A DNA stretch of 64,000 bases, taken from assembly GCA_012026655.1 (NCBI GenBank), contig JAAILG010000133.1, forward strand, positions 62,001 through 126,000, given 5' to 3'. Origin of the DNA: Hydrolagus affinis (taxonomy: Eukaryota). Below the pieces are notes generated by a model. The model was not told where the DNA came from. It saw only the letters and a program-made list of their open reading frames with translations, and did not search any database. A program made the position numbers and the translations under genes. This document shows positions 21,601-60,377 of the stretch, in pieces (position 1 is the first letter of the stretch; every line of letters starts with the position of its first letter).

Positions 21601-23360
21601 GCAGTCACAAAGCTAACCAGCAACTTAATGTGGAGGATTCTCAGCCTCAACAATGTCACTCCTCCATCATTATCCATGTTAGCATCGACCTGCACAGGCC
21701 AAGATAGAAAACCAGCTTAACCACTCTTCCAACATAACGCTCCTCACACTTCCGCATTGGAACATCAGATTGGATGGGGAGCTTGAAGTTCCCAATGAAC
21801 TCACAACCTTGAGACCCAGAGAAGAAAGTGACTCCGGCTGAGGCAGGGCTTGGTTGGCAGCACTTGTGCAGGTGAGAGAAAAGGGTTTGCCTTTTCGAGC
21901 TGTTTTTTTTTCCTGATAACCATGTACCCTGGCAGATCAACGGGCAGTGCTCGTGTTCATTGTTCTCAGCAAATTGGTACACACATGAAAACTGGAGATA
22001 ACTAGATCACTGCACCGCGATATCTTACTGCCTCTCAGTGCAGTGATGAATTAACAAAATCATTGAGCGAAACAGAGAAACCTTACCCAAGGCAGTGACA
22101 AGTGCCATCCGTGTGTTGATGTAAAAAGACTGCGATCATCACATAAAACAAACACTCCAATTGCTGTTCGGGTCTCACCCACACTCCTGAAAATGTCCCA
22201 GAACTATCTTGTCATGACACTGTTTCCATTGAATCATTTGTTGTTGGGAAATGACAGAAACTCGGCGGATTTATTATCGCGGATGTAATTTTTCAGTTTA
22301 TCACCTTTCCTGAGGGAGAAACTAAGTCGAGCCCAGCACATTACAAGCTGTGGCTGAGATGATTTATTTTGCAATGTTACTGTACTGAGCACAGTTTACG
22401 AACAGATCCGCTTAATTCTGAGAGGTCAAACTGGCTGTCATTAAATTCAACCCTAATCCCAGCCCAACCCAAGCTATCACACCATTTTACTGAGACAGTC
22501 ATCAGAGAATCATAATAAAAACCTGTGTGTTTCTCGCACTAACCAGACACCCTAATGTATAACTAACTATCAGTGAAGGGCCACGGAATTGCTGCCACTT
22601 TACGTTTCTTTGGTGGACGTTACTAATCGTGCAACACACATTAACAAGTGAAACATCAAAGCATAACAATATTGTGTAAATAGCCAAGGGAGGTTTTACA
22701 GGTACAGAAACATCACCATCTGCTTTTATACATTACAGAAGATAATAAAACAACTGATCAGCATAAATCATAACTTTGCTGCAAGACTCAATTCATATTG
22801 ACGCTGAATGCTTGATATTGTAAGTAATCCCTAATGCAAGTCTGGAAAGCACACAAGCAACAAAGTGAAAGGATTAAATTATATTTTAATATGTATCAAG
22901 AGTTATACATTGGCAAAACTACCCAAGCTACATCAGCCTGCTGCCTCACCATAATACTAATAATAACCCATATGTTTGACACAGCGCCTTTCATTGTGCT
23001 TCACAGAATATAATGTAAACTGTAAGGACTGTGTATTTTCTAGGCCAATTTGTGCGCATCAAAATGTGAAGTATGGTTGGTGGAGCAGCCACTTACCGTG
23101 AACGGGATAGACCACAGCGTCTGACACATTCCATTCTGTTTGAATAGTTCCAACGGTTAGATCTGGTTCTAAACCATTCATGGTAGAAAGGATTCGATTC
23201 CAAATAAGGCCAAGCTTTTCAAGTGAACACAGATAACAGAGGGCTAGCCATGACATGCTGAGCAGTCACACAACACAGGGAGATTGATGAAGATTGATGA
23301 AGGCAATACTCAAGCAGCTGGTTGTTGTTTTATGGTACAAGTTGGTTCTCAAGTTGAAAC

Positions 23361-23470
23361 AATAATAATAGTAATCCTTGCATTTGATATAGAGCTTTTC
23401 ACATCTTATCGACGTCTCAAAGCACTTCACAGAATATCGTGTAAAGTGAATTGACTGTATATTTGTGGGC
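23361..23470 (-). mobile_element. SINE 3' fragment abutting the Penelope-like element
   Basis: AATAATAGTAATCCTTGCATTTGATATAG...ATTTGTGGGC. Confidence 0.85.
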
Positions 23471-23658
23471 AGATTCTGGAAATCTGAAACAAAAACAGAA
23501 AGCAAGTCAGGCAGCATCTATGGAAAAAGGAAAAGTGAGTCGACGTTTCGGGTCCAGATCTGACAAAGGATCATGGACCCGAAACGTTGATTCACTTTTC
23601 CTTTCTCTCCATAGAAGCTCCCTGACCTGCTGAGTATTCCCAGCCATTTTTGTTTTGT
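23470..23658. mobile_element. Palindromic Penelope-like terminus with degenerate hammerhead core
   Basis: Inverted arms GTCAGGCAGCATCTATGGA...GTTTCGGGTCCA / TGGACCCGAAACG...CCTGAC; core CTGACAA-A-GGATC..GACCC-GAAACGTT at 23560-23588. Confidence 0.7.
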
Positions 23659-25311
23659 TACCTCTCTTGCAACCCTGTCTCCTCCAGCCTCTACACTGGA
23701 GGTCAACCTAGACTTTGAGCTCCTTCTGACCCAGAGCTGAGAGTGCTGACAACCAGACTGACAACCGATGAGTAAGCTTTCAGCAGGTTCACACCGCTGT
23801 GTGGAACTCTGCCTGAATCCTCTCCGTCCCTCCCTCGGCTTTCAAAAGCCATTTCAAATATGTTTATGCCATCAGCCACCTGACCCAGTCTTGCACTCGG
23901 CTCAAGAACTCACTCCATCCCTTTCTGTGAAGCACTTTGTGACCGCCACCTGTGTGAAAGCCGCTGTTTTAAGCACAAGCTGCTGTTGTTCAAATCTTGT
24001 GATGGTAAAATAAACCAGATTAGCTTCTGAGAAAACATTTTCGTTTGAAGTGCTCGCCGAGTTCAATCTATTTTCTGAAGTGAAGAGAGATGTAGTTTTT
24101 ATGTAGCAACAATTCAAGGGGATTTACATGTTTGGCGATCCATCTATTCCCTGCTATTCTCCATTGTCGTGCCAACTGCCTTCTCCAGGGTCCATGCCAT
24201 CTCAAGCCAGCCTTACCACACACAGTTGGCCTAGTCAAGATGTGAACATTTAATTTGTTCTATTGTGATATTAGAAAAATCTGGAGTTGCGTTCAGTTAG
24301 AGATAGGGTAAATTCTGGATATTTGGGACTTTGACAGACCATTTTGCCCCAAGTGGATGTTGACAATGGCTTTTCCAAATATACTCATGAGCCACGTGGA
24401 GCACATTTCCCCATTGAAACAGCCAATAGCCTGTTACGTAGCAACCTCTCAGAATAAACGTTATTCCAGCTGTGGAGGTAAATGCAAGGGGACAGTTTAG
24501 CAAACTAATTTGATCTTTGTGATATTTCACGCTGTGCAGTGTTTGAAATATATATGAGAGCTGCATTACTAAACCCATTTAGCATACGTCAAATTAACAT
24601 TACAGTTAATTTGAGCTCACATAAATTACACAGCTCCACAACTGTTCAGAATTAGGTGAAATTTTAATTAGAAATCCCATCAAGATTTTACGATTGTTCA
24701 TCTCAGTGTAATCTCTTTATCTTTAGCCCTTTTAGAACATTCATTATCTCAAGCAGGACAGTAGTGGAGATGCCACAAGTTGTCCTTGAGGCCTTGAATG
24801 AGGAGGAAAGGATTTCTCATTCTAGTTTTGTTGTGTGTTTGTGTGTGTGTGCGTCTGTGTGTGTTGGCAGGGAGGGGGGCATCCAAGTCATAGACATTCA
24901 TGTTCTGATTAAAAAGAAGGAAACGGGTGTAACTGTAGGAAAGATTGTGACATAAATGGCACTGTCTGGTGCCTAACAGATTGCTGTAAATTGATGTAAT
25001 GTGTTAATGCAGCCTCGGGATTCAACGGATAATCAATGATCATCAAGCATCACTCTCGTGTCTTTTCAATCCTTGATTGGATTTCACCGAGTAGTGATTC
25101 ACTTACACGGGACCATTAGCTGCAGGATAGGTTAACCACAATCTATCGGGACCTGTCAGTTGTCAATTCAATAAACTTAAAGCCATCAACAACATCAACA
25201 ACTTCGATTTATATAGCGCCCTCCACACCGGATGGCATCTCAGAGCGCTTAATATCTGAATGTCAGTGGTTCATATATCAGCCACAGAACGGTGGCCATT
25301 GTTATTCCCTC

Positions 25312-30025: not shown

Positions 30026-30130
30026 CAAACAAAAACCAAACTTGCTGGGAACACTTGGCAGGTCAGGCAGCATCTATGGAGAAAGGAAAATGAGTCAACC
30101 TTTCGGGTGCACGACCCTTAGTCAGAACTG
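30026..30130 (-). mobile_element. Single-arm Penelope-like terminus with degenerate hammerhead core
   Basis: Minus strand CAGTT-CTGACTA-A-GGGT CGTGC ACCC-GAAA-GGTT-GACT...GATGCTGCCTGACCTGC; homologous to the 23.5 and 50.8 kb copies. Confidence 0.7.
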
Positions 30131-30307
30131 ATCTCTCTGATGGTGACGTGTGGACTCCACAGTGTTAGGTGTTGGAATTAGTGAAAGCATTTCAATGTGC
30201 GCTGTGAATGGCTGAGCTGGAACTTTGGTCTTTTCGTGTACAAGTCTCCAACTGGTCCTGAATGGATTTAATGCTTTGAATATATGTAACCAGATACCAG
30301 CAGTAAT

Positions 30308-34518: not shown

Positions 34519-34842
34519 CTATAACAGAAAGCACAGCAAGGCATGGACATCGTTCCCTTCAAGCTTGTTGTGTACTGGGGATGATGGGATCAGGGCAATG
34601 TGGTGCTGGTGAAAATACCAATGCTGGAGAATAAATGGGACATGCTTTTACTAACGCAAAAAAGCTTGCATTTAATACAGTGACTTTCACGTTTAATGGG
34701 TAGAAAGCATCTCAAGTACATCCCAGGATATGCTGTAAAGTGTTATGTTGATAGTCACTGGCCCCTACCCCCATTTGCCCAGTGACCAACCCCACCACTG
34801 TGAAGTACCCACACCCGCTATGAAAGATGTTGTATGTGGTAC

Positions 34843-35010
34843 CTGTGTAAAATCCCACAGCTTCTGCTTGAGTCTTGAAACCTCTTCACATTTCCTGAGA
34901 TTTGGGGGTTTACTCCGTCCATCATCTATGAGACAGTTGGTGTCGGGTAGGAAGGTGATTGAGCCGAGCGCCCCCAGCTGCAGTAGCCCTTCAGTGGTGT
35001 AACGTACCAG
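34843..35010 (-). CDS. GALNT9: GALNT9 coding exon (168 nt, exon 10 equivalent), ricin-B lectin beta repeat
   Basis: tgttttccag|CTG GTA CGT...ACA CAG|gtacca; LVRYTTEGLLQLGALGSITFLPDTNCLIDDGRSKPPNLRKCEEVSRLKQKLWDFTQ; translated by hand. Confidence 0.95.
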
Positions 35011-36099
35011 CTGGAAAACATCCTTCTTTCAATGTCCCTGAGTCTCAGCAAACCTCAATAACCCTAACCCACAACAAACATGTCAGTGTTGTTCTAGAAC
35101 ATCTTCCCTGCAATGCAGGTTCTTTAAAAGCCAACCTTTTAATTTCTGAGAATTTTGTGTTTCAGTGAATAACAGTGAGATTTTATTACAAGTCCCAGTT
35201 TATTACGATGTCTGAAATTACGGCCTACTCTCAACCTGTGAGAATGTCTGGTCCCAAGATTTAAGGGCCGTACAGTATTTGGCAAATTAAATCTGAACTT
35301 AGTTCGGAAACGGTTTTTTCGCAGTTTGGTTAAAAAAGAATTTGGCCTCTGGATTGATACATTATTAAGGAATTTGCCATAATTCTGTCCCACATTAGAG
35401 TTTAAGACAAAGTGGCTCCACGGGTTAAGACAAGTGCGGCAGAGTTTTCTCGGTTGATTACTTTGGTGTTTCCCAAAGCCGCTAGATGGACTTGTGAGTC
35501 ACGATCTGATATTTCCTCGTGAGCAGCCTCAATGAATGCATCAATTAGCACATTGATTAATGCATCAAGTCCGGTTGTGATGTTACCTCATAGACATAAA
35601 CTGCCTGACATTGGAGCTGTATTGACTGAGGATTTGGGCAGGGATCCCAGAACAAGTCAGATACACCAATATCTCCAAACATCTGAGCTGCCAGCTAGTG
35701 ACAAAGCCTGGCTGCCCTGGCTCCCCATCACTCTGTTTCAATATAAATAATACACCAATGACCAGGAACGTGAAGCTAAATGTATTACTTTGAAAGGCAG
35801 CCATTTTGCTTTTAGATCATTGCCAAATATTTGTTGTGTAATAAATAACACAGATAAAGGAGTTGAAGTGCAACTTCAACAATTTTGCATCTTGCAGCCA
35901 GAGAAACTGAATGTTCCGGAGTCAATCTGACTTTCAGTCACCTTCTTACACAAAGAAAATACATAATGTTGAAAATATTCTGTTTAGCGTATTTATAATA
36001 GTGATCCAATAATCCTTGCATTTGATATAGCAAATTATCACATCTCAAAGTGCTTCACAGGAATTACTGTAAAGTGTAGTGACTGGAATTGTAGGCAAA

Positions 36100-39700: not shown

Positions 39701-40856
39701 AGGCTGTTTCTCCTCTCCAACATACACATGGCTCATATACTCCACCCTCACTGCCTGCTGCATCCCTCAATAGTTTGACTCCCTGAGTATCTATCCAAAG
39801 TAATCATCTGGTTTGAATTGATGGCTTTTAGCCCCTTTACTGAGTACTGTATCTGGTTGAGGGTGAAGCCTGTAGATTATACCGTCCAAAGATCTGATAA
39901 CTTGTATTTCATGAGCCTGTAAACAGAGTCTGTAGATAACCAGTTCAGTGAAGACAGAAATGGATATCTCAGACTGTCCGGTGCTGAGAGACAAGGCTGA
40001 TTTTCAGTGTCCAGCAAATCTCTAGTAGCTTTTCAGGGATTCAGTGAATCGCTGACCTCAGCAAAGGATTTATTTTGACTTCCTACAAGTTGTTTTGTCT
40101 CTTGTAACAACCAGGTACCACACAAGCAAAGCCCTGGTGGTGAGGAAACTAGAGCAGTCAAAGTAGAAAAATACAGTGGATTGAATAAATACTGTACAGA
40201 TTTCTGAGGCTACAAAGAAGGGGAATGCAATGAGATAGACAGTTTGCATGACTGCAGACTTCCATCAGGATTTGTTACTCCAAAAACAATGAAATCATCT
40301 GTAAAAGAGGAGAACCTGACTATGCACTCTCTGTTTGATGTCTACTCCCCAAACTAACAGGCCTCTGTCACCCAAAGAGGTACCGAGGGCCTTGATGGCA
40401 GCTCTGAGATTTGTTTGTCGATGTGTATTATCACAGCAACGGTATTGAAGCAAACATCAAGCTTCCTCCTTCAATGCAAAGTTTTCCTCTTTTCATTTTA
40501 TATTCTCTTTGAGGTCGCCTCACCCCCCCCACTTCCCATCGTTCCTTATTCTCTGTGGCAAATACAGATGTGCAGACTTTCCCTGGGCCACAAGCTGGTT
40601 AGTCTGACCGTAGTGATAAGGGACCAGTTTCTCTTTGGGATTTAGACTGTGTACGACAGTTTGAGAAGCTCGCAGGTGACTACAGTAATTTGTAAAGTAG
40701 ACACATGCACATCCAAGGAGGCCTGTTCCTTATCAAGTGGTCTCTGACCACCCACAATCTATAAAGGGAAACCCAGGCTGGTACTTGTTGCTCCTTTTGG
40801 GCTTGATGAGAGGGAAAGTTTAAGTGACAGATTGTCTGGCAGAGTGTCAGGCCTAC

Positions 40857-40952
40857 CTGCGATGTCATTCCATGACATGGGTACAGAATCGCTTTGTCGT
40901 CTTCCTCAGCGCCTTGGTCCAAACAGTATCCACTGGCCTTGTTGTTCCTCAC
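40857..40952 (-). CDS. GALNT9: GALNT9 coding exon (96 nt, exon 9 equivalent), ricin-B lectin alpha repeat
   Basis: tttgtcccacag|GTG AGG AAC...TCG CAG|gtaggc; VRNNKASGYCLDQGAEEDDKAILYPCHGMTSQ. Confidence 0.96.
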
Positions 40953-43072
40953 CTGTGGGACAAAATAAACAAGGCATCATTCTTACTGTCAATAATCAGT
41001 CCATGCGTGTGATGCAGTGTCTCGTCACATTGTCAGAATGTCTCAAAGCTTCTGGTAACGTGTAGTGACTGTGTGTTTTAGGGATTTATGCCATTCATGC
41101 CAGCAACGTGATATGATAAGTTATTATTACAGTTCTGGCTGAGTCTTTGATTTAATGAGTATATCAGAATCAATCGTAAGTCTGTCAGCCTTGCTCTGGA
41201 GGAGGTGAAAAGAGAGTGTGTTTGTCACAGTAAATCTACAATGTTGTAAAAGCAGAAATGCAAAGTGTTCTGAAGGAAACCCAAGGAGAATGAACAGCAG
41301 AGACTTTCCTGGAGTTATTACTGGGGACGCTGCTCTGCCAGCAAATACTGGCTGCTTGACATCTTCCTCAGATTGCCTAACACAGTCGGACAACAGAGGT
41401 TCAGTCGAGACTCCTCTTCTCCTCACTGCCGTTAGCTACTCTCAGGTTGTTAGTGTTTCATTTATAGAAACATTAAACCCATTGCAGTACTGTCCACAGT
41501 TCTCCAGCCACTCCAGCCTGGAGTGGAATGAAGGCTGCTCTGTGACCCAGGACTGGCCTACGGCTCCTTATTCTGTGTCTGGTGGAGATTGAGAACTGTC
41601 CTGATAAGAATCGTCTGTGAGAAGCAGGGAATCACCACAGACTGGTGCAATAAGCTTCCAAATATTCTGCAGGGAAATTAAACACAGTGTCTGCATCGCC
41701 TGATCGTTTTATACCTTCAGGCAAAACTCAAGCAAGCTGCCCAGACGCTTACACCAACTTCACAAATTATTGATTCACTTCATTAAACGTTGCCCTCTGA
41801 GCTGAGGGAAAGGCAAAACTTTCTCTGGGAAAGAGAACAAGTCAGTGGAGTATGGCTTTTCTATCGCGTGATGGCGGAGAGGGCTTTCAGAAACAGGACA
41901 AAGGCTTGTTAGAACTGAGCAGGAAGAAAGGCGTTTGGGGTTAAACACATTCACTAATGATTGTACACATTAACCATGCTGTGTATCAAGTGGAGTTATT
42001 AGCCTACACCCCATGATGTGAAATCCACAGACTGGCTGGCAACCTGCCCCAGACACAGCCCAAATCAACACACCATCTGATACTGTAACAACTGAAAGGA
42101 ATTGTACCGTTTGTTTTGCTGGATCTTCCAGAAGGGAAATCGCCTTCCATTTCATGGCGCTAGAATACAAGATTGCAAGCAATTTAACATTCTCCCAGTG
42201 GGTTAGAAACTTGTCAATCTGCCTAAGATGCTTAAACAAGCAATTCATGACGTGAGTACCAAGCCTGCTCTCCCTCAGCCAAGTTATTCTCCTTCAAGAC
42301 TTACTGATTTCAGACTCTAATGATCATTTTAGAAAGAAACCTGCAGATGGGGTGGCTGGCAGCCCAGTGTAGGAATGTTCTGTTGAGCCACAGAGATGGG
42401 GTGTGAGACAATGGCTAACATTGAACACATGGTGAGTTTTCAGTTGCAAATCAGACAAGGGAAGGATGAATATTCAGAGCAACATCTGTGCTGCTGACAA
42501 TGAACCCACTGTTCCTGGTGCACGCGGAGAGTTTGAGGACAAATTGCCAAACTCTTCTCTAAATTAGATATGTTGGGTGATAATGGAAACTATAGGACCA
42601 GATTCACCCAGAAATATCCTCGATACTTGGGATGAAATCAGCCTCGTTTTCCATTCCAGCTGACGTCAGCAAGGATAAGGATGAGTCCAAAAGACTCAAA
42701 AAGTTACTTGCCCTTGCTTGGCCAACACACCCCTGTTTGTTAAAGAACTATTTGTAGGTCAGGATTCTGAGATCTTCATCTAAACCTCTCATGATCTAGG
42801 TCCATGCGGGAGGCGAGGTGCCAGGGGCGCTCTGGAGTTTAACCTTGTTTTACCTTTAAGGAAAGGAGATCCATTATTCAAAAACCTTTTCTCCAGAAAA
42901 CAAACTGCAGGCTGTAATGCAGAAGGCTCACAGGAAACCAGAAACAGAAGGAGGCATTCAGCCCATCAAGCCTGTTGCACCAGTTTGTTACGACCTTGGC
43001 AAATCTATTAATCCCAATTAAAATGTGTTGACAGTGGGGGAGTTGGCACCTTGGACCCGTGTTCTCAGATAC

Positions 43073-43210
43073 CTCTCCATAGGTGATGGTGTTGTTGTAA
43101 ATCCTCATTTCAGGGTAAACGTTGTCCAGATACCACTTGAAGCTCCGACACTGGAGTTTATTTCGGAGCGTGATTCTCTCGGACACGTCGCCAAAATCAA
43201 CCCCAGGATT
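43073..43210 (-). CDS. GALNT9: GALNT9 coding exon (138 nt, exon 8 equivalent)
   Basis: ttgacag|AAT CCT GGG...GGA GAG|gtatct; NPGVDFGDVSERITLRNKLQCRSFKWYLDNVYPEMRIYNNTITYGE. Confidence 0.96.
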
Positions 43211-43816
43211 CTGTCAATGTAACAAAGAGAGAAAATATTGATATAAAAGTGCCTTGCTCTCTGTTGGGCTTTGTTTTTACATTTTACATCGACTTGATTT
43301 CTGTTTGGTGTATTTCCCCACTCTGTCAGCTTGGAGTCAAGACAAAAGATTGACAAACTGTGCACAGCGACGAGGAGCTGAGGAGCCGGTTTTGGGCGAC
43401 AGACACCATCCCCAGAGGGACAGTTCCCTGTGTCTTCGCTTCTCCTGTAGGAGGAGCTCTAGGCCTCCGCTCAGCATCACTCTACAGTCATTTTATTCTT
43501 TGCACCATCCTAAAAAATGACAGCCCTGGTAAACATTCCTATTCTGTTCATACAAAGACATCTATAATTGGAGCTACGCTTTGGTGACCTCGATGTGGTA
43601 ACACGCATGCCGGAAGCCCACGGTTATGTCTGTTATGTGAGTGTTTTCCACGTTATTTCTTTAGGCTGAGGGTTATTTTTTACCCCCACACACATGACGA
43701 GAATGTGCTAAGGGAATTTTACAACCTGTGAGAGAAGGTAGTGATGTAACTGTCTGTGACTCAGAGATCATCTTATCTTCAGCTACGTGACAGTGACTGT
43801 ACCCTCCATTACTTAC

Positions 43817-47700: not shown

Positions 47701-50700
47701 TTCCAGAGACCCCCCCCACACAGCGAGCAGTTTCTTAACGTGCCTTGTGTCCTGCCCACAACTGCCCTTCCTGGTAACAGCTTCTAGCTGTCCACAAGCC
47801 TTGGGCACATCACTCTGAGCACTGAGAATGGGCTCCAATGATACAGGCGTTTCAGTCCCCTCTCTAGTCTCTGTCTGTCTAATGTTGGGTCTGGAATAAC
47901 TTTCAATTATTCATAACACAGCAGACTGTTGAAAATGAAGATACTCAAACTGAGCCCTAGTTAATGCTCACGGGAATGTTGACAACTGCACATTTAGATG
48001 TCCAAAGGCAGTAGCTATTCTCAATGCTGATTAGCAACCTGACATTGTGGTGGAGTCAGAGCATGGCACATTAACAGCTGGTAAAGTGGAAACTCAAACA
48101 CCATTAAGGGGATCCTCGCAGCTACAATAGTGCAGTGTCTGATTTAAAACACCTCCTTACAGGACGATCAGAGACTCAGTCCTGCTGTCACTGATGCCGT
48201 TTAGAGTGGTGTCTCTCAGCCTCTCCATCACCTCATGTTAATCTAGTTTTTAACCTGATTTCCAATTCCCTCATTTACTTTAGTTTAATGTAAAAAAGGC
48301 CACAAATCTTCCTCCACCGGCTGTGTCAGCCCCTCTTCTCCTTCAGGTGCTTAAACTCCTTATTTCTCTATTGGGATTATTATTATTAGGATTAAAGGTC
48401 CTGAGCTGCGTGCTCCCTCTCCCCAGGACCGTAGCCACTGGACAGTCCTTAACACCTGCAGACAGGCCAATGTGGATTGAATTGTTCTACAGTTATCTGC
48501 AGCTGTGATCAGAAAATGGCTCACATTAAATCTTTCTCTGTCCAGTGTCCCTCCACCAACGACATCAAAATTATAGTTGTACAGCGGCTTTCAAACCGGG
48601 ACACATAACGCACACTGTAAATAAATGCACTTTTGCTAATAGTGTGAGATAACCACTTACATTTTGTCATCCAATGAGATGGCGAACCCACACTGAATTG
48701 TCGGCAAGCGCAGAGTGTAATCTCGGGCTAGAGAACCGTCTACCCCGGGGGAAAGTGGAATAAATAATCCTCTCACTGTTGTCCTCCTCACCATCGCTAG
48801 CCCCCTTTTTTTTCCAGATCAGACTCATAATGCACTCTGCTGTTCCGTCCTGCACTGCTTCACTGCCTTGGGCAAGTCGATGTGTCAGGCTCGATTCCCA
48901 ACAACATGCGCACACTGTGTACTGCGCGGTGAATCACAGAGCTTCAGTCTGTGGGAGAAGCTTTGCAGGTACATGGCCTCAACTGGCGTTCAGAATGGTT
49001 TATATCAGGCTGTCAGCCTGGTCAGCCTCTTGTGAGAGAAAATGAACCAAAGCTGAAAGGGTTCCAGTCAAATCTATATTTCATGGTTGGTTTGCAGACC
49101 ATGAAATGTAAATAATTACTACAAGAAAACTCTTAAATCAAGCTTTCAGTGTTGTTGGGGCTGCTGTTGTGCTTACACAGCCAATACGCCAGAGGTCGAT
49201 TAAATAACTCAGCTGAAGCTACATCGTCAGCTATATATTTGCAGCGCTTCAACAAAACCTGACGTGAGATTCGTGTAACACAAGACACTCTGCATGTGAT
49301 ACCGTGTATGCCATGCCACACAGTATCCGCCCTCTGCCTCTCTCGGTTCGCGCTGCTAATGTGGACCTGGAGCTTTGAACTGTAGCTGGTGTGGCCGGAT
49401 CACAGGGTAGGCCCTGTTTCCCTCAGTGGGAGGATGACACCTTTTATTGGATGTTCTGCCTCGGAGAGAATCTGGCTGCTTATCGACTGCTGAGCCCAAC
49501 TTATTGCAGCTCCCAGCCACAACAGGCTGTTTGCTTTTCATCATGTGTGATTTATCTCCCGCATTCTCACAATCACCGCAGACTATTTCAGTCTGGTTTT
49601 TTTTGTTTGCCGAGCTCTGTAGGCATTGGAAAAGCTGTGTTCTGTGCTCTTCACATCGGGGGGTTTATTAAGTGTTTTTTTGTTTTGTTCGGAGTATGCA
49701 AAGTGATTAGCTATCCCTTGTGATTGTCACACTTATATATTGCCTCACACAAAAATATATAAGCAATTTTGCTCCTTTTATCTCAAGCACTTTCAGACAT
49801 CCTTGTGACATGAGAGGCTCTAAATCAATGTAAATTGTAATGTATTGTAGCCGCCATTATCTGCTGGTTATATCCAGCCCAAACTGAGATACTTCCTTGC
49901 CAATCCCTGGCGAGCAGTGATGCATTCTCAGGTGATTTAATATAAGCCACTTTAAAATCTAGTCATTTTTTCAGTAATTAAAAAAAGTTGCATAATATTT
50001 GCTCTGTTTAATCGGCATCATTCATGAAGACAATTTTACATAAGAGACCCAGTCTGTCTTTAATTATAATAGTGTTCAGGCTGACACTCCAACACAGAGC
50101 TGGGGGGGATTCACTCCATTATCAGATGCCATATTCCAGATGAGATGTTAAAACAATGTAAAACTAGAGAAGCGGATAAACGGATGTCCTGTCTGCCTGT
50201 CCAGGTGACAATAAAGGTCCCCCATGGCACTACATGAAAGGAGAAGGGAATTTCTCCCGGCTTCCTGACTAACAATCCACCCTCCCCCCCACACCCCCCC
50301 CCCACGCCCCCGGGTGCAATTCATTATACACTTCATGGTTGTTTGGGACACTTTGCTGGGGATAAATTGGCTTCTGCGTTTGCCTTCAAAATACACAATC
50401 AGTATGCTTTACAGTATACTGTGAAGTGCTATGAGATGTCCTCCTGACATGAAAGGTACTGTATCAAATCCAAAGATTATTGTTAACATTAAACCACGCC
50501 TGAAAGACCAGGTACAGGCATACAGCACCCCCCACCACCCCGAACAAAGCAGAGAATCCCTGTCACTTCCAATTCCTTTCTCTAAGCTTTGGTTCCTTTG
50601 GTTTGCTGGGAAAGCGTTGGTAATGTTGCTGCTTGTGACAAATAAGGATGCCCCAGTCAGTCTCTGTCGGAGCTGTCCTGTCAGAACCACAGAGAGACAC

Positions 50701-50719
50701 CAAACAAAACACAAAATAC

Positions 50720-50946
50720 TACAGATGCTAGAAATCTGAAACAAAAACAGAAGTTACTGAGGAAACTCAGCAGGTCAGGCAGCATCCATGGAGAAAGGAA
50801 AAGGAGTCAATGTTTCGGGTCAACAATCCTTCGTCAGAACAGAACAGTTCTGACGAAGGGTTGCAGACCCGAAATGTTGACTCCTTTTCCTCTCTCCATG
50901 GATGCTGCCTGACCTGCTGAGTTTCCTCAGTAACTTCTGTGGTTTT
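50720..50946. mobile_element. Palindromic Penelope-like element with two opposed hammerhead-ribozyme cores
   Basis: 94-bp inverted arms 50747-50840 / 50847-50940 (6 mismatches, 6-nt spacer); each arm has CTGACGA-A-stem II-GAAA. Confidence 0.75.
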
Positions 50947-52027
50947 TCCCCCTTTGTGGCCTCTCCAGGAGACGATCCTAACAAACTGTAAACCCCAGAA
51001 CACTGGCTCTCACACTCCGCCGTCACAGTGTGAGCGGCTTGTGATCAATGCAAATGGATGGCCAAAGGGTAAAGAGAGAGCCACACAGATGTGTGAGATG
51101 CAGGCCTGCCTTTCCATCTGGTCAGCTGCAGTGCCAGTTTCACTCACTGTCTCAATAGACATATGAGAGCTCCTGCGTTCAGGTGGGAGCCTTCGCAACC
51201 GAAGGCTATTAATTACAGAGGGGTAACTTGGACAGTCCAAGCCACATTACTGATAGATTCAGTGCAATATACCGCCTCCCTAATGATCATCATTGATTTC
51301 AACTTCATTGTTTGGCCTTCGTGTTTTCCCTCTTACTGTCTCGCTCTCCTCAGCGAGGTGGAGACTAGAACTAAGGCAGCCTGCGATGCCGCCCCCCCAC
51401 CCCCCAGCTGTTCAGGGTTTGCCTGTGAAGGGTTTTGGGGGCCCCCAACCTGTGGCTCAATTGTTTCAGTCTTGTAGATTCTCAGCAAATCTTTCACATT
51501 AAGACAGAATTCATTGACCCACGTCCAAAGCACTTTATCGGAATACTTGATGTAAATCCATTCAAACGCAACGTGTTTCAGGTCACACCTCGGAAACATC
51601 ATTCAACACTCAAATCCTCTCAGGGATTAGCCCTCCCTTAAAGCATGCCTTTAGGTGGCTGGTAACGTGTTAATATTCTATTTATCTCATTGTTAATGTG
51701 TCAAGATATCATTCCAAAGGCATAAAGAAAGATGCTTTATGTGCGCTGTGTTCCTGCTGTGATCTGCCACAGCATCCTGCCTGATGGGAAAGGTGGGGTT
51801 CAGTGCAACTTTCAGCTAGGATAATCATTATTCTCACCTACCACATCGTGCCAATAATAATAATAATAATAATAATCCTTCCATTTTATATCACACACAA
51901 AATATACAGTCAATTCACTTTACAGTCAATTCTGTAAAGCGCTTTGAGACATCTCGAAGACGTGGTAAGGCACTATATCAAATGCAAGGTTTACTATTAT
52001 GTAGCACCCTATCATGTGGGCTCATGC

Positions 52028-59904: not shown

Positions 59905-60027
59905 GTGTGGCAGTGACCAGAGAGCTCTAGCTGTCTTCTGACCAAAGTACCGTGCGTTTCAGATGTCAGCCGTTTGTTTAATTCCCTTTTGGCAGCTGTG
60001 ACTGATTATTTCGGGTCGGCCTCTTAC

Positions 60028-60225
60028 CTGATTGGTGCCGCCTCATCACCCTTGTCCAGCCAGTCCTGTGGTGGGATAATATACATACACCACAGGCCCC
60101 AGTTGTAGCCGTGGGCTGCGTTGGAATATTGCTGCACCTCAAATGTGTTGTACTTGATATTGTCTATGGCTGGCAGGATGATGCGTGTACGATCCGCTTT
60201 GATTCTGCTGAGCACTGGTTGCACC
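60028..60225 (-). CDS. GALNT9: GALNT9 coding exon (198 nt, equivalent to human exon 5), catalytic domain
   Basis: ttccattctctgtcag|G GTG CAA...ATC AG|gtaaga; encodes VQPVLSRIKADRTRIILPAIDNIKYNTFEVQQYSNAAHGYNWGLWCMYIIPPQDWLDKGDEAAPIR, matching recalled vertebrate GALNT9. Confidence 0.96.
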
Positions 60226-60377
60226 CTGACAGAGAATGGAAGAGGAAATGCGGTTAAGTATCAGTTATAGGAACAGGAGGAGGCCATTCAGCCCGTCAAG
60301 CCTGCTCTGCCATTTTTCTTTCATCCAGGCCAGCCTGCAACTCAGAACCATCTGCCTTTTCTACATACATCTTTGTT

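What the first reader, a model, noticed from the sequence alone, without database searches (positions are those of the whole stretch)
50747..50940. Intronic 94-bp palindrome made of two opposed minimal hammerhead ribozymes
Seen: arms 50747-50840 and 50847-50940 are reverse complements (88/94) around a 6-nt spacer. The plus arm reads AGTT-CTGACGA-A-GGGTT gca GACCC-GAAA-TGTT-GACT. That gives the hammerhead boxes CUGANGA and GAAA around stem II, an extra A after A9, a tiny stem III (family consensus AACGTT, palindromic) and a 4-bp stem I (AGTT/GACT), with predicted cleavage after GUU near 50878. The minus arm has the same core. Established: Penelope-like retroelements carry such minimal type I hammerheads, which cleave as dimers, and they often form inverted termini. 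Inference: this is a non-autonomous Penelope-derived unit. Transcription from either strand includes one ribozyme plus its antisense, so in GALNT9 pre-mRNA the ribozyme would be sequestered in a long hairpin that could be an ADAR or Dicer substrate.
Basis: partly seen in the sequence, partly recalled or inferred. Interest (0 to 1): 0.8.

Follow-up and report, generated by a model that had tools for sequence, protein, structure and literature searches.

The report
Dead Penelope-type double-hammerhead hairpin insert
This is a decayed, back-to-back pair of end fragments of a Penelope-like jumping gene, each carrying a small hammerhead ribozyme motif, inside an intron of a sugar-transferase gene; this layout is already described for such elements, so it is ordinary.

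Summary
Arms 50747-50840 and 50847-50940 are reverse complements (88/94) around a 6-nt spacer, and each starts 3-4 nt upstream of CUGACGA-A-stem II-GAAA. The predicted cut is after 50878 on the plus arm and between 50809 and 50808 on the minus arm.

Only the plus arm passes a strict minimal-hammerhead descriptor, which 1 of 200 shuffles of the window matched. The minus arm, the one in host-gene sense, has an A·C mismatch in stem II. Rfam finds no hammerhead.

The element belongs to a very abundant family in this genome and in its RNA. Family-majority letters restore the palindromic ACGU stem III and the broken stem II pair.

The same motif class in 120 metagenome contigs lies 78-222 nt downstream of an RT plus GIY-YIG ORF in 28 loci. 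Its helix I covaries, and it forms similar tight head-to-head palindromes (arms 93-109 nt, spacers 5-7 nt).

Head-to-head 5'-truncated copies, with an optional 30-40 nt tail at one end, are a published Penelope hallmark. This locus has that tail on the left arm only.

I found no sign of transcription of this locus, of cleavage ends or of A-to-G excess. No RT ORF was linked to the family in this genome.

Verdict: a new member of a known kind, of low interest. The first-stage scan had noted this family many times elsewhere in the same genome.

The parts
50741..50840 (-). Left arm: a 5'-truncated 3'-terminal fragment of the element, with its sense on the minus strand. It runs from the hammerhead 5' edge to the short 3' terminus.
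   Evidence: nhmmer 50842-50738. Family loose ends with heterogeneous flanks at about 50740 (table 7).
50702..50740 (-). Optional 3' 'tail' extension, present on the left arm only.
   Evidence: Family pieces start at 50702-50707. Summed depth roughly halves in 50707-50743 compared with 50744-50780 and drops about 70-fold before 50707. There is a second set of heterogeneous loose ends at 50706. The c2 left arm shares the first part of the tail. Published tail lengths are 30-40 bp (PMC8557442) and 31 bp (PMC3846280).
50805..50841 (-). Minus-arm minimal hammerhead motif, in host-gene sense, with the predicted cut between 50809 and 50808. Stem II has an A·C mismatch and stem III reads ACAU.
   Evidence: it fails the strict descriptor. 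The family majority differs at 50827 and 50811.
50841..50846 (.). 6-nt spacer (turning point). AGAAC is directly repeated across the junction.
50846..50882 (+). Plus-arm minimal type I hammerhead motif with intact core boxes and the predicted cut after 50878. Stem III reads AUGU.
   Evidence: It fits the covarying helix I of the motif class.
50847..50946 (+). Right arm: a 5'-truncated 3'-terminal fragment ending near the short terminus. The end is uncertain by about 6 nt.
   Evidence: nhmmer 50844-50948.
23487..23661 (.). Second copy (c2): an asymmetric head-to-head pair. The right arm starts at the hammerhead edge but reads CTGACAA (G8 lost). The left arm is truncated inside the stem II loop.
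30028..30131 (-). Third copy (c3): a single arm starting at the hammerhead edge, with a decayed core (CTGACTA, GAAAGG).

Best explanation
Window 50702 to about 50946 is a dead insertion made of two heavily 5'-truncated 3'-end fragments (partial pseudo-LTRs) of a Penelope-like retroelement family. The fragments are joined head to head. Each arm begins 3-4 nt upstream of a minimal type I hammerhead and runs about 100 nt to the element's 3' terminus. The left arm also carries the optional tail of about 39 nt.

Inferred: the pair arose in one integration event by the element's own machinery. That could be reverse transcription primed on both cut target strands, or self-priming or template switching when the cDNA had just passed the hammerhead. 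It has decayed since, with about 6% divergence between the arms, much of it at CpG sites.

Inferred: in any transcript that spans it, the ribozyme strand pairs with its antisense copy in a hairpin of about 100 bp, so no self-cleavage is expected here. The hammerhead is a relic of the parent element's RNA and has no function at this locus.
For: Shown at this locus:
- The palindrome and motif anatomy are as described.
- There are five arms in the window, with different turning points in c1 and c2 and one single arm. The pairs were therefore formed independently, and the palindrome is not a fixed unit.
- The family is very abundant. At 80% likeness or more, 7196, 2804 and 1032 contig pieces were laid in three DNA runs, and 8060 of 13.9 million RNA reads.
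- Family-majority letters restore CpG in stem III (50811, 50875) and the G-C pair at 50827. They vary the stem II loop (50822, 50864, 50865). No high-share variant is listed inside the core boxes (with 112 rows not shown).
- Some copies continue upstream of the hammerhead into a shared sequence (loose ends at 50840 and 50845). The arms are therefore truncations.
- The family has two 3' termini 34 nt apart. The tail sits on one arm only here and in c2.

Shown on related DNA:
- The motif class found 120 metagenome loci.
- In 28 of these loci the hammerhead lies 78-222 nt after the C-terminus of an ORF homologous to the L005 ORF. That ORF has RVT_1 (E 5e-5) and GIY-YIG (22.7 bits against a cut-off of 22.6), and its nearest atlas clusters are RT + GIY-YIG.
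- Helix I, which was not part of the search pattern, covaries: score 0.362 against 0.116 in shuffles, 0 of 500 as high, and 0.066-0.121 in the slid controls.
- All 7 loci with two exact motifs are head to head.
- 14 of 104 testable motifs have an inverted partner within 150 nt, against 0 of 104 in the control. The arms are 93-109 nt with 5-7 nt spacers.

Literature:
- PMC4209133 (text read) gives the minimal-hammerhead features and mentions opposite-strand pairs.
- PMC8557442 and PMC3846280 (passages read) describe inverted 5'-truncated copies, a tail at one end, palindromes at inverted junctions and a self-priming model.
- PMC11167929 (main text read) shows that a Penelope-like protein cuts and extends both target strands and starts reverse transcription internally, 85-92 nt beyond the hammerhead cut.
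Against: - No RT/EN ORF is linked to this family in this genome. None of the 150 longest ORFs of the window hits an RT, and tblastn with the L005 ORF gives nothing better than E 0.33.
- There is no convincing target-site duplication: 47 of 500 shuffles align as well.
- Rfam reports no hammerhead even at E up to 10.
- Stem II is 5 bp, shorter than the 6-8 bp typical of the 2014 families.
- No stem II covariation is seen among the four window arms that keep both strands of stem II.
- No empty orthologous site was recovered, because no contig bridged the locus.
- The metagenome loci come from other, unnamed organisms, so the Penelope link is by motif class, not by homology of the shark family itself.
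Confidence: 0.8

Rival explanations
1. The palindrome, or the unit of about 100-140 nt that starts at the hammerhead, is itself a non-autonomous mobile unit. It would be a retrozyme-like or SINE-like parasite of Penelope elements, copied as such from master copies, and not a by-product of truncation at each insertion.
For: - Four of the five window arms begin within a few nt of the hammerhead 5' edge.
- Several fold-back joints in other copies also have the sense arm starting at 50837-50847 (table 5).
- In metagenome families, 25 of 102 copies share no more than 20 nt upstream of C3 with any relative, and 345 of 517 within-family homology breaks fall there.
- A 2026 preprint argues that animal retrozymes derive from Penelope pLTRs (10.64898/2026.07.22.740005; abstract and Results part 1 read).
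Against: - c1 and c2 turn at different points and c3 is a single arm.
- There is no tandem array here.
- Part of the family continues upstream of the hammerhead.
- BLAST breaks may partly reflect divergence of the region upstream of the hammerhead and not true ends.
Confidence: 0.12
2. It is a DNA-transposon MITE whose terminal inverted repeats happen to contain hammerhead-like boxes.
For: The shape is a near-perfect palindrome of about 200-260 bp. The flanks show a weak similarity that could be an old duplication.
Against: - The whole element is the inverted repeat, with no internal unique part.
- Single-arm and asymmetric copies exist.
- The outer ends come in two lengths.
- The flank similarity is not significant: 47 of 500 shuffles do as well.
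- The motif class sits behind RT + GIY-YIG ORFs elsewhere.
Confidence: 0.03
3. The hairpin has been taken over by the host as an RNA gene or regulatory element, such as a miRNA precursor, a Dicer or ADAR substrate with a role, or an intronic ribozyme switch.
For: The hairpin is long and stable. There are sub-threshold Rfam hits to miRNA precursor models, for example MIR831 at 63.2 bits against a gathering score of 100. Family members are present in RNA.
Against: - All Rfam hits are below gathering scores and fit any long hairpin.
- There was no RNA depth on the unique flanks in the run laid.
- No read-end pile-up was seen.
- A>G plus T>C make up 51 of 145 variable places in RNA, against 31 of 84, 32 of 86 and 31 of 76 in the DNA runs.
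- The arms are decaying at CpG sites like neutral DNA.
Confidence: 0.03

Closest known systems
Minimal hammerhead ribozymes of Penelope-like elements (Cervera and De la Pena 2014, PMC4209133)
   Same: Both have CUGANGA and GAAA boxes, an unpaired nucleotide between A9 and G10.1, a G10.1-C11.1 pair, a helix I of 4-5 bp, a missing or tiny helix III with palindromic 15.2-16.2 (ACGU in the family majority), mass dispersal as single motifs, and pairs on opposite strands.
   Different: Stem II here is 5 bp, against the 6-8 bp of the families they describe. The opposite-strand pairs they mention are 100-700 bp apart, whereas here the two C3 positions are 13 nt apart. In this copy stem III has decayed to AUGU and ACAU.
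Inverted pseudo-LTR arrangement of EN+ Penelope-like elements with an optional tail (Arkhipova et al. 2013, PMC3846280; Craig et al. 2021, PMC8557442)
   Same: Both show a head-to-head inverted 5'-truncated copy, a 30-40 bp tail at one end only, a short palindrome or repeat at the inverted junction, and variable or absent TSD.
   Different: Here both copies are truncated to about 100 nt, so nothing lies between them. There is no ORF and no direct pLTR.
Poseidon element PAc of Anolis (PMC11167929)
   Same: In both, the hammerhead lies a fixed short distance upstream of the insertion's 3' end. In PAc the cut is at +26 and reverse transcription starts at +111 to +118, with a second start that defines the tail. 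Here the distance from the cut is about 68 nt to the short terminus and about 100-107 nt to the long one. No reads end at the cut site in public RNA-seq in either case.
   Different: Sequence homology and ORF overlap were not tested here. The 3' region here is U/G-rich and not AC-rich.
Animal non-LTR retrozymes (PMC7229834; preprint 10.64898/2026.07.22.740005)
   Same: Both are short ORF-less units with a type I hammerhead, probably mobilised by Penelope-like enzymes, with many monomer derivatives.
   Different: Retrozymes are defined by head-to-tail tandem units that give circular RNAs. Here there is no tandem copy, and the hammerheads face each other on opposite strands.

Membership tests
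Hammerhead ribozyme, type I, Penelope-type minimal form | Conserved core C3-U4-G5-A6-N7-G8-A9 and G12-A13-A14, with A15.1-U16.1 and H17 | tested here: met
   Both c1 arms carry the core. The other window arms have lost G8 or G12-side letters. No high-share variant in the boxes is listed for the family (which is a partial listing).
Hammerhead ribozyme, type I, Penelope-type minimal form | Stem II closed by G10.1-C11.1, with an extra unpaired nucleotide between A9 and G10.1 | tested here: met
   The plus arm has 5 bp including one G·U. The minus arm has one A·C mismatch, which the family majority repairs.
Hammerhead ribozyme, type I, Penelope-type minimal form | Palindromic 15.2-16.2 that allows a dimeric helix III | tested here: inconclusive
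   The family majority and c2 read ACGU. This copy reads AUGU and ACAU, so the feature is met by the family and not by this locus.
Hammerhead ribozyme, type I, Penelope-type minimal form | Helix I supported by covariation | tested here: met
   In 96 distinct motifs of the class, the four inner pairs show 9-52 two-sided changes. The covariation score is 0.362 against 0.116, with 0 of 500 shuffles as high. The shark plus arm forms 4 pairs and the minus arm 3. Covariation within the shark family itself was not testable.
Hammerhead ribozyme, type I, Penelope-type minimal form | Recognition by curated Rfam hammerhead models | tested here: not met
   No hammerhead family was reported at E up to 10 or at gathering scores. 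That the Rfam models are built on canonical hammerheads with a helix III is my recollection, not a call.
Hammerhead ribozyme, type I, Penelope-type minimal form | Self-cleavage at H17 | not testable with these tools
   No pile-up of read starts or ends appears in the RNA run (table 6). This is weak negative evidence from a polyA single-cell library.
Penelope-like element (EN+), insertion product | RT with a GIY-YIG endonuclease ORF belonging to the same family | tested here: inconclusive
   It is absent from the window. It is present next to the same motif class in 28 of 120 metagenome loci. It was not examined for the shark family genome-wide.
Penelope-like element (EN+), insertion product | Head-to-head inverted 5'-truncated copy | tested here: met
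   c1 and c2 show it. All 7 double-motif metagenome loci are head to head.
Penelope-like element (EN+), insertion product | Optional 30-40 bp tail, often at one end only | tested here: met
   The family termini lie at about 50706 and about 50740, 34 nt apart. The tail is on the left arm only in c1, and a partial tail is on the left arm only in c2.
Non-LTR retrozyme | Head-to-tail tandem units with one hammerhead per unit | tested here: not met
   The region has no direct repeat family and no tandem repeat. All three window copies are single or inverted.
MITE / DNA transposon | Constant terminal inverted repeats with fixed-length TSD | tested here: not met
   The outer ends are variable, a single-arm copy exists, and the flank similarity is not significant.

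The most novel reading that the evidence does not exclude
The 5' edge of the hammerhead may be a preferred stopping or turning point for Penelope reverse transcription. Hairpin inserts of about 200 bp with two facing hammerheads and a 5-7 nt spacer would then be a regular product of integration across distant animals: this cartilaginous fish and the unnamed hosts of the metagenome contigs. That would give the folded hammerhead a structural role, as a roadblock, a self-priming site or a dimer contact between two template RNAs, beyond or instead of self-cleavage. It would also make every such insert a ready-made long double-stranded RNA source in host introns.
Probability: 0.3. Interest if true: 0.5.

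Novelty: new member of a known kind. Interest (0 to 1): 0.25.

Why it matters
In itself it matters little. It is one decayed copy of a very abundant retroelement family, in a layout that the Penelope literature already describes.

It is useful as annotation. Long perfect hairpins of this family will recur in introns of this genome and should be masked before miRNA or ribozyme calls are made.

The one point worth a specialist's look is the regular turning point just outside helix I. I saw it both here and in unrelated metagenome contigs. It could inform the still unsettled integration mechanism of Penelope-like elements and the debated role of their hammerheads.

Tried and rejected
- **Rfam.** Scans of the locus at E up to 10 and of the whole window at gathering scores gave no hammerhead. 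They gave only sub-threshold miRNA-precursor hits, which any long hairpin gets. I rejected these as evidence for a miRNA.
- **Mis-spaced pattern.** My first box pattern had the wrong gap and found nothing. It was corrected.
- **TSD search.** The best flank alignment is gapped, is not adjacent to the right arm end, and is matched by 47 of 500 shuffles. For c2, 427 of 500 shuffles match. I count this as inconclusive.
- **Autonomous element in the window.** The 150 longest stop-to-stop ORFs gave only a weak Ricin_B_lectin hit. tblastn with a Penelope ORF gave nothing.
- **Other local checks.** There is no tRNA-like head and no tandem repeat. A profile search found no further arms beyond the five.
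- **Empty orthologous site.** The DNA runs laid had no contig bridging the locus.
- **Editing.** I found no A>G/T>C excess at family level. The test is weak because family variation dominates and the locus itself had no RNA reads.
- **Viral-contig scan.** A 17-mer of the arm gave 23 chance hits, none a family member.
- **Peptide motifs.** A regex for GalNAc-transferase peptide motifs, meant to place the missing exons, found nothing.
- **Earlier notes.** A search for a Penelope ORF in this genome found none.
- **Papers.** Lunse et al. 2016/17 (PMC5785218) is not held. I know it only through the reference list and text of PMC6765202.
- **Supplements not seen.** I never opened supplementary files. 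The supplementary figures of PMC4209133 (vertebrate motif families) and the supplementary tables of the 2026 preprint (one Chondrichthyes species) may already list this family, which would lower the novelty further.
- **Literature on this family.** My searches for a description of it in cartilaginous fish were only. Neither listed such a paper.

Full report
**Observation**

The sequence at 50700-50990 holds an inverted repeat. The repeat finder reports arms 50723-50840 and 50847-50964, 118 nt, 86% complementary, with 6 nt between them. Beyond about 50940 the identity between the arms drops to about 57% by my count on the alignment. The right arm therefore probably ends near 50941-50946.

As RNA, the 291-nt region folds into one hairpin at -190.2 kcal/mol, against -72.2 +/- 5.0 for 200 shuffles.

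**Motif**

The plus arm reads as follows:

| Segment | Letters | Coordinates |
|---|---|---|
| Helix I, 5' strand | AGUU | 50846-49 |
| Core box | CUGACGA | 50850-56 |
| Extra nucleotide | A | 50857 |
| Stem II, 5' strand | GGGUU | 50858-62 |
| Loop | GCA | 50863-65 |
| Stem II, 3' strand | GACCC | 50866-70 |
| Core box | GAAA | 50871-74 |
| Stem III and H17 | UGUU | 50875-78 |
| Helix I, 3' strand | GACU | 50879-82 |

The minus arm has the same boxes (50837-50813). It differs in three ways: an A·C mismatch in stem II, a stem III that reads ACAU, and only three helix I pairs.

The two boxes alone are not beyond chance: 5 matches in the window against 3.7 expected. A descriptor that also asks for a G10.1-C11.1-closed stem II of at least 4 bp finds only the plus arm. 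It found a hit in 1 of 200 dinucleotide shuffles of the window.

Rfam reports no hammerhead at E up to 10 and nothing at gathering scores. The miRNA-precursor hits are all far below their thresholds and are what a long hairpin gives.

**Family**

The window holds five arms in three insertions:
- c1 is this locus.
- c2 (23487-23661) is an asymmetric head-to-head pair. Its left arm is cut inside the stem II loop, and its right arm starts at the hammerhead edge but has lost G8.
- c3 (30028-30131) is a single arm starting at the hammerhead edge, with a decayed core.

The differing turning points and the single arm show that the pairs formed independently.

I laid one RNA run and three DNA-contig runs on 50300-51400 at 80% likeness. 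This gave 8060 RNA reads out of 13.9 million read, and 7196, 2804 and 1032 contig pieces. All of them fell on the element, apart from a second small repeat at 50411-50484.

Where the family majority differs from this copy:
- It restores CpG in stem III (50811 T>C, 50875 T>C).
- It restores the G-C pair broken in the minus arm (50827 T>C).
- It makes pair 10.5 C-G in about a third to a half of reads (50862).
- It varies the stem II loop (50822, 50864, 50865).

No high-share variant inside the core boxes is among the 40 rows shown; 112 rows were not shown.

Loose ends at 50840 and 50845 share an upstream sequence in part of the contigs. Longer copies therefore exist, and the arms here are truncations.

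Heterogeneous loose ends at 50706 and 50740 mark two alternative 3' termini 34 nt apart. The fall in depth before 50707 and its halving in 50707-50743 mark the same two termini.

In c1 the left arm runs to the long terminus and the right arm to about the short one. In c2 the left arm again is the longer one. c3 ends at the short terminus.

**Is it Penelope?**

The window has no RT or endonuclease ORF. The 150 longest ORFs gave only a weak lectin hit, and tblastn with a Penelope ORF gave nothing.

I therefore tested the motif class elsewhere. These hold 127 exact motifs.

L005 carries an inverted motif, then a 595-aa ORF, then a direct motif 133 nt after the ORF. The ORF has RVT_1 (E 5e-5, below Pfam's cut-off) and GIY-YIG (22.7 bits against a cut-off of 22.6). 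Its nearest atlas clusters combine RT and GIY-YIG.

Thirty-three of the 120 loci have a homologue of that ORF. In 28 of them it lies on the same strand and ends 78-222 nt upstream of the hammerhead. The other 87 loci have no hit, and 61 of their 91 motifs have at least 600 nt of upstream sequence. Many of these are therefore truncated or too divergent.

Helix I was not in the pattern, yet it covaries across 96 distinct motifs. The score is 0.362 against 0.116 in shuffles, with 0 of 500 as high, and 0.066-0.121 when the partner is slid. The shark plus arm fits it with four pairs.

These are the features that Cervera and De la Pena list for Penelope minimal hammerheads: the extra nucleotide between 9 and 10.1, G10.1-C11.1, palindromic 15.2-16.2 and a helix I of 4-5 bp (PMC4209133, parts 1-2 of the text read).

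**Layout**

All seven metagenome loci with two exact motifs are head to head. Of 104 motifs with enough flank, 14 have an inverted partner arm within 150 nt upstream. None of the 104 does in a reversed-sequence control.

The tight pairs are:

| Locus | Arm length | Identity | Spacer |
|---|---|---|---|
| L097 | 97 nt | 98% | 7 nt |
| L043 | 109 nt | 96% | 5 nt |
| L036 and L107 (same locus) | 93 nt | 89-90% | 5 nt |

These figures are, and they match the shark locus closely.

Within families, 345 of 517 homology breaks on the 5' side fall within 20 nt upstream of C3. Twenty-five of 102 copies share no more than 20 nt upstream with any relative. The 3' breaks cluster at 60-89 nt and at 110-139 nt from C3.

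The literature already describes these traits for Penelope-like elements:
- strong 5' truncation;
- an inverted 5'-truncated copy at the 5' end;
- a 30-40 bp tail, often at one end only (PMC8557442, passages);
- a 31-bp optional tail on one inverted pLTR;
- palindromes at inverted junctions;
- a self-priming model and solo pLTRs (PMC3846280, passages).

The Anolis element PAc cuts and extends both target strands. It starts reverse transcription internally, 85-92 nt past the hammerhead cut, with a second start that defines the tail. Its hammerhead needs the protein to cut, and no public RNA-seq reads end at its cut site (PMC11167929, main text read).

**Mechanism**

The best reading is a single Penelope-type integration that produced two facing, heavily truncated copies. 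Whether this came from priming on both cut strands or from self-priming is inferred and not shown.

At the RNA level, the hammerhead secondary structure is worth -6.7 kcal/mol for the plus arm and about -2.6 kcal/mol for the minus arm. The hairpin is worth -184 to -187 kcal/mol. The antisense partner is also transcribed first and lies immediately adjacent. The ribozyme should therefore be buried in any transcript that spans the element.

No sense-sense dimer can form in cis. In this copy a trans helix III would be A-U, U·G, G·U, U-A at best.

**Host context**

ORF pieces at 60027-60260 and 42881-43213 on the minus strand match polypeptide GalNAc-transferases of known structure, with E values of 1.5e-6 and 7.6e-13. 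A piece at 40683-40976 weakly matches the ricin-type lectin domain.

The element therefore lies between exons of a GalNAc-transferase gene read from the minus strand. The paralogue was not tested, and I did not locate the exons that must lie between those two pieces.

In host sense, the hammerhead strand is the decayed minus-arm copy.

**RNA evidence**

The unique flanks (50522-50669 and 50966-51400) have zero depth in the RNA run. Transcription of this locus is therefore not shown.

Family reads lie on both strands in similar numbers, and 81% of what was laid runs on into unlike sequence. This fits copies embedded in many other transcripts.

No place passed the tool's test for clustered read starts or ends.

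A>G plus T>C make up 51 of 145 variable places in RNA, against 31 of 84, 32 of 86 and 31 of 76 in the three DNA runs (my sums). All of this is weak negative evidence from one polyA single-cell library.

**Comparison and novelty**

The element works like, and on present evidence is, a Penelope-derived insertion carrying Penelope-type minimal hammerheads. It is not a retrozyme in the strict sense, because there is no tandem. It is not a MITE.

Earlier notes of this scan list 87 findings with the words hammerhead and Penelope in this same genome, including one on this window's other copies. Other notes call the genome a cartilaginous fish. I did not test the taxon.

I found no paper describing this particular family. 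Supplements that I could not see may hold it.

The only aspect that may go beyond the literature I read is the regular turning point just outside helix I, seen in distant hosts. The statistics for it here are modest, and the families are not independent.

**Verdict**

The functional speculation is unsupported. This is a new member of a known kind, of low interest.

Noticed in passing
window 50411-50484: A second, unrelated high-copy repeat of about 75 nt lies beside the palindrome. Summed contig depth is about 4950 in X1, and RNA depth is 196-357 (table 2).
   Followed up: no
window 50706 and 50740 (RNA run X14): RNA loose ends just outside the two 3' termini have unusually uniform flanks (agreement 0.67-0.69; 508 and 521 reads). 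DNA contigs at the same places are heterogeneous (0.41-0.43). This is probably one or two highly expressed transcripts holding a copy.
   Followed up: no
window 60027-60260, 42881-43213, 40683-40976, 34768-35028 (minus strand): These are exon-like ORF pieces of a polypeptide GalNAc-transferase, covering the catalytic and ricin-type lectin parts. The pieces for the residues between the first two were not located.
   Followed up: partly
L005:1060-3609: A near-complete Penelope-like element on a metagenome contig. It has an inverted hammerhead, an RT + GIY-YIG ORF of 595 aa, and a direct hammerhead 133 nt after the ORF.
   Followed up: partly
L097:2039-2239; L043:3409-3631; L036:1587-1777 (same locus as L107:4204-4394): Tight double-hammerhead palindromes with 5-7 nt spacers in unnamed metagenome hosts. 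L097 sits in A/T-rich DNA, and its symmetry seems to extend into that DNA.
   Followed up: partly
window 50841-50850: AGAAC is directly repeated at the turning point. Either copy can pair with GTTC of the right arm, which looks like a microhomology slip at the junction.
   Followed up: no
window 50902-50989 (plus) and 23269-23517 (minus): In sense orientation, the arms open a reading frame at an ATG about 25 nt after the predicted cut. It starts MLPDLL in both c1 and c2. In some Penelope elements the pLTR holds the first codons of the ORF (PMC3846280, PMC11167929). I did not test whether that applies here.
   Followed up: no
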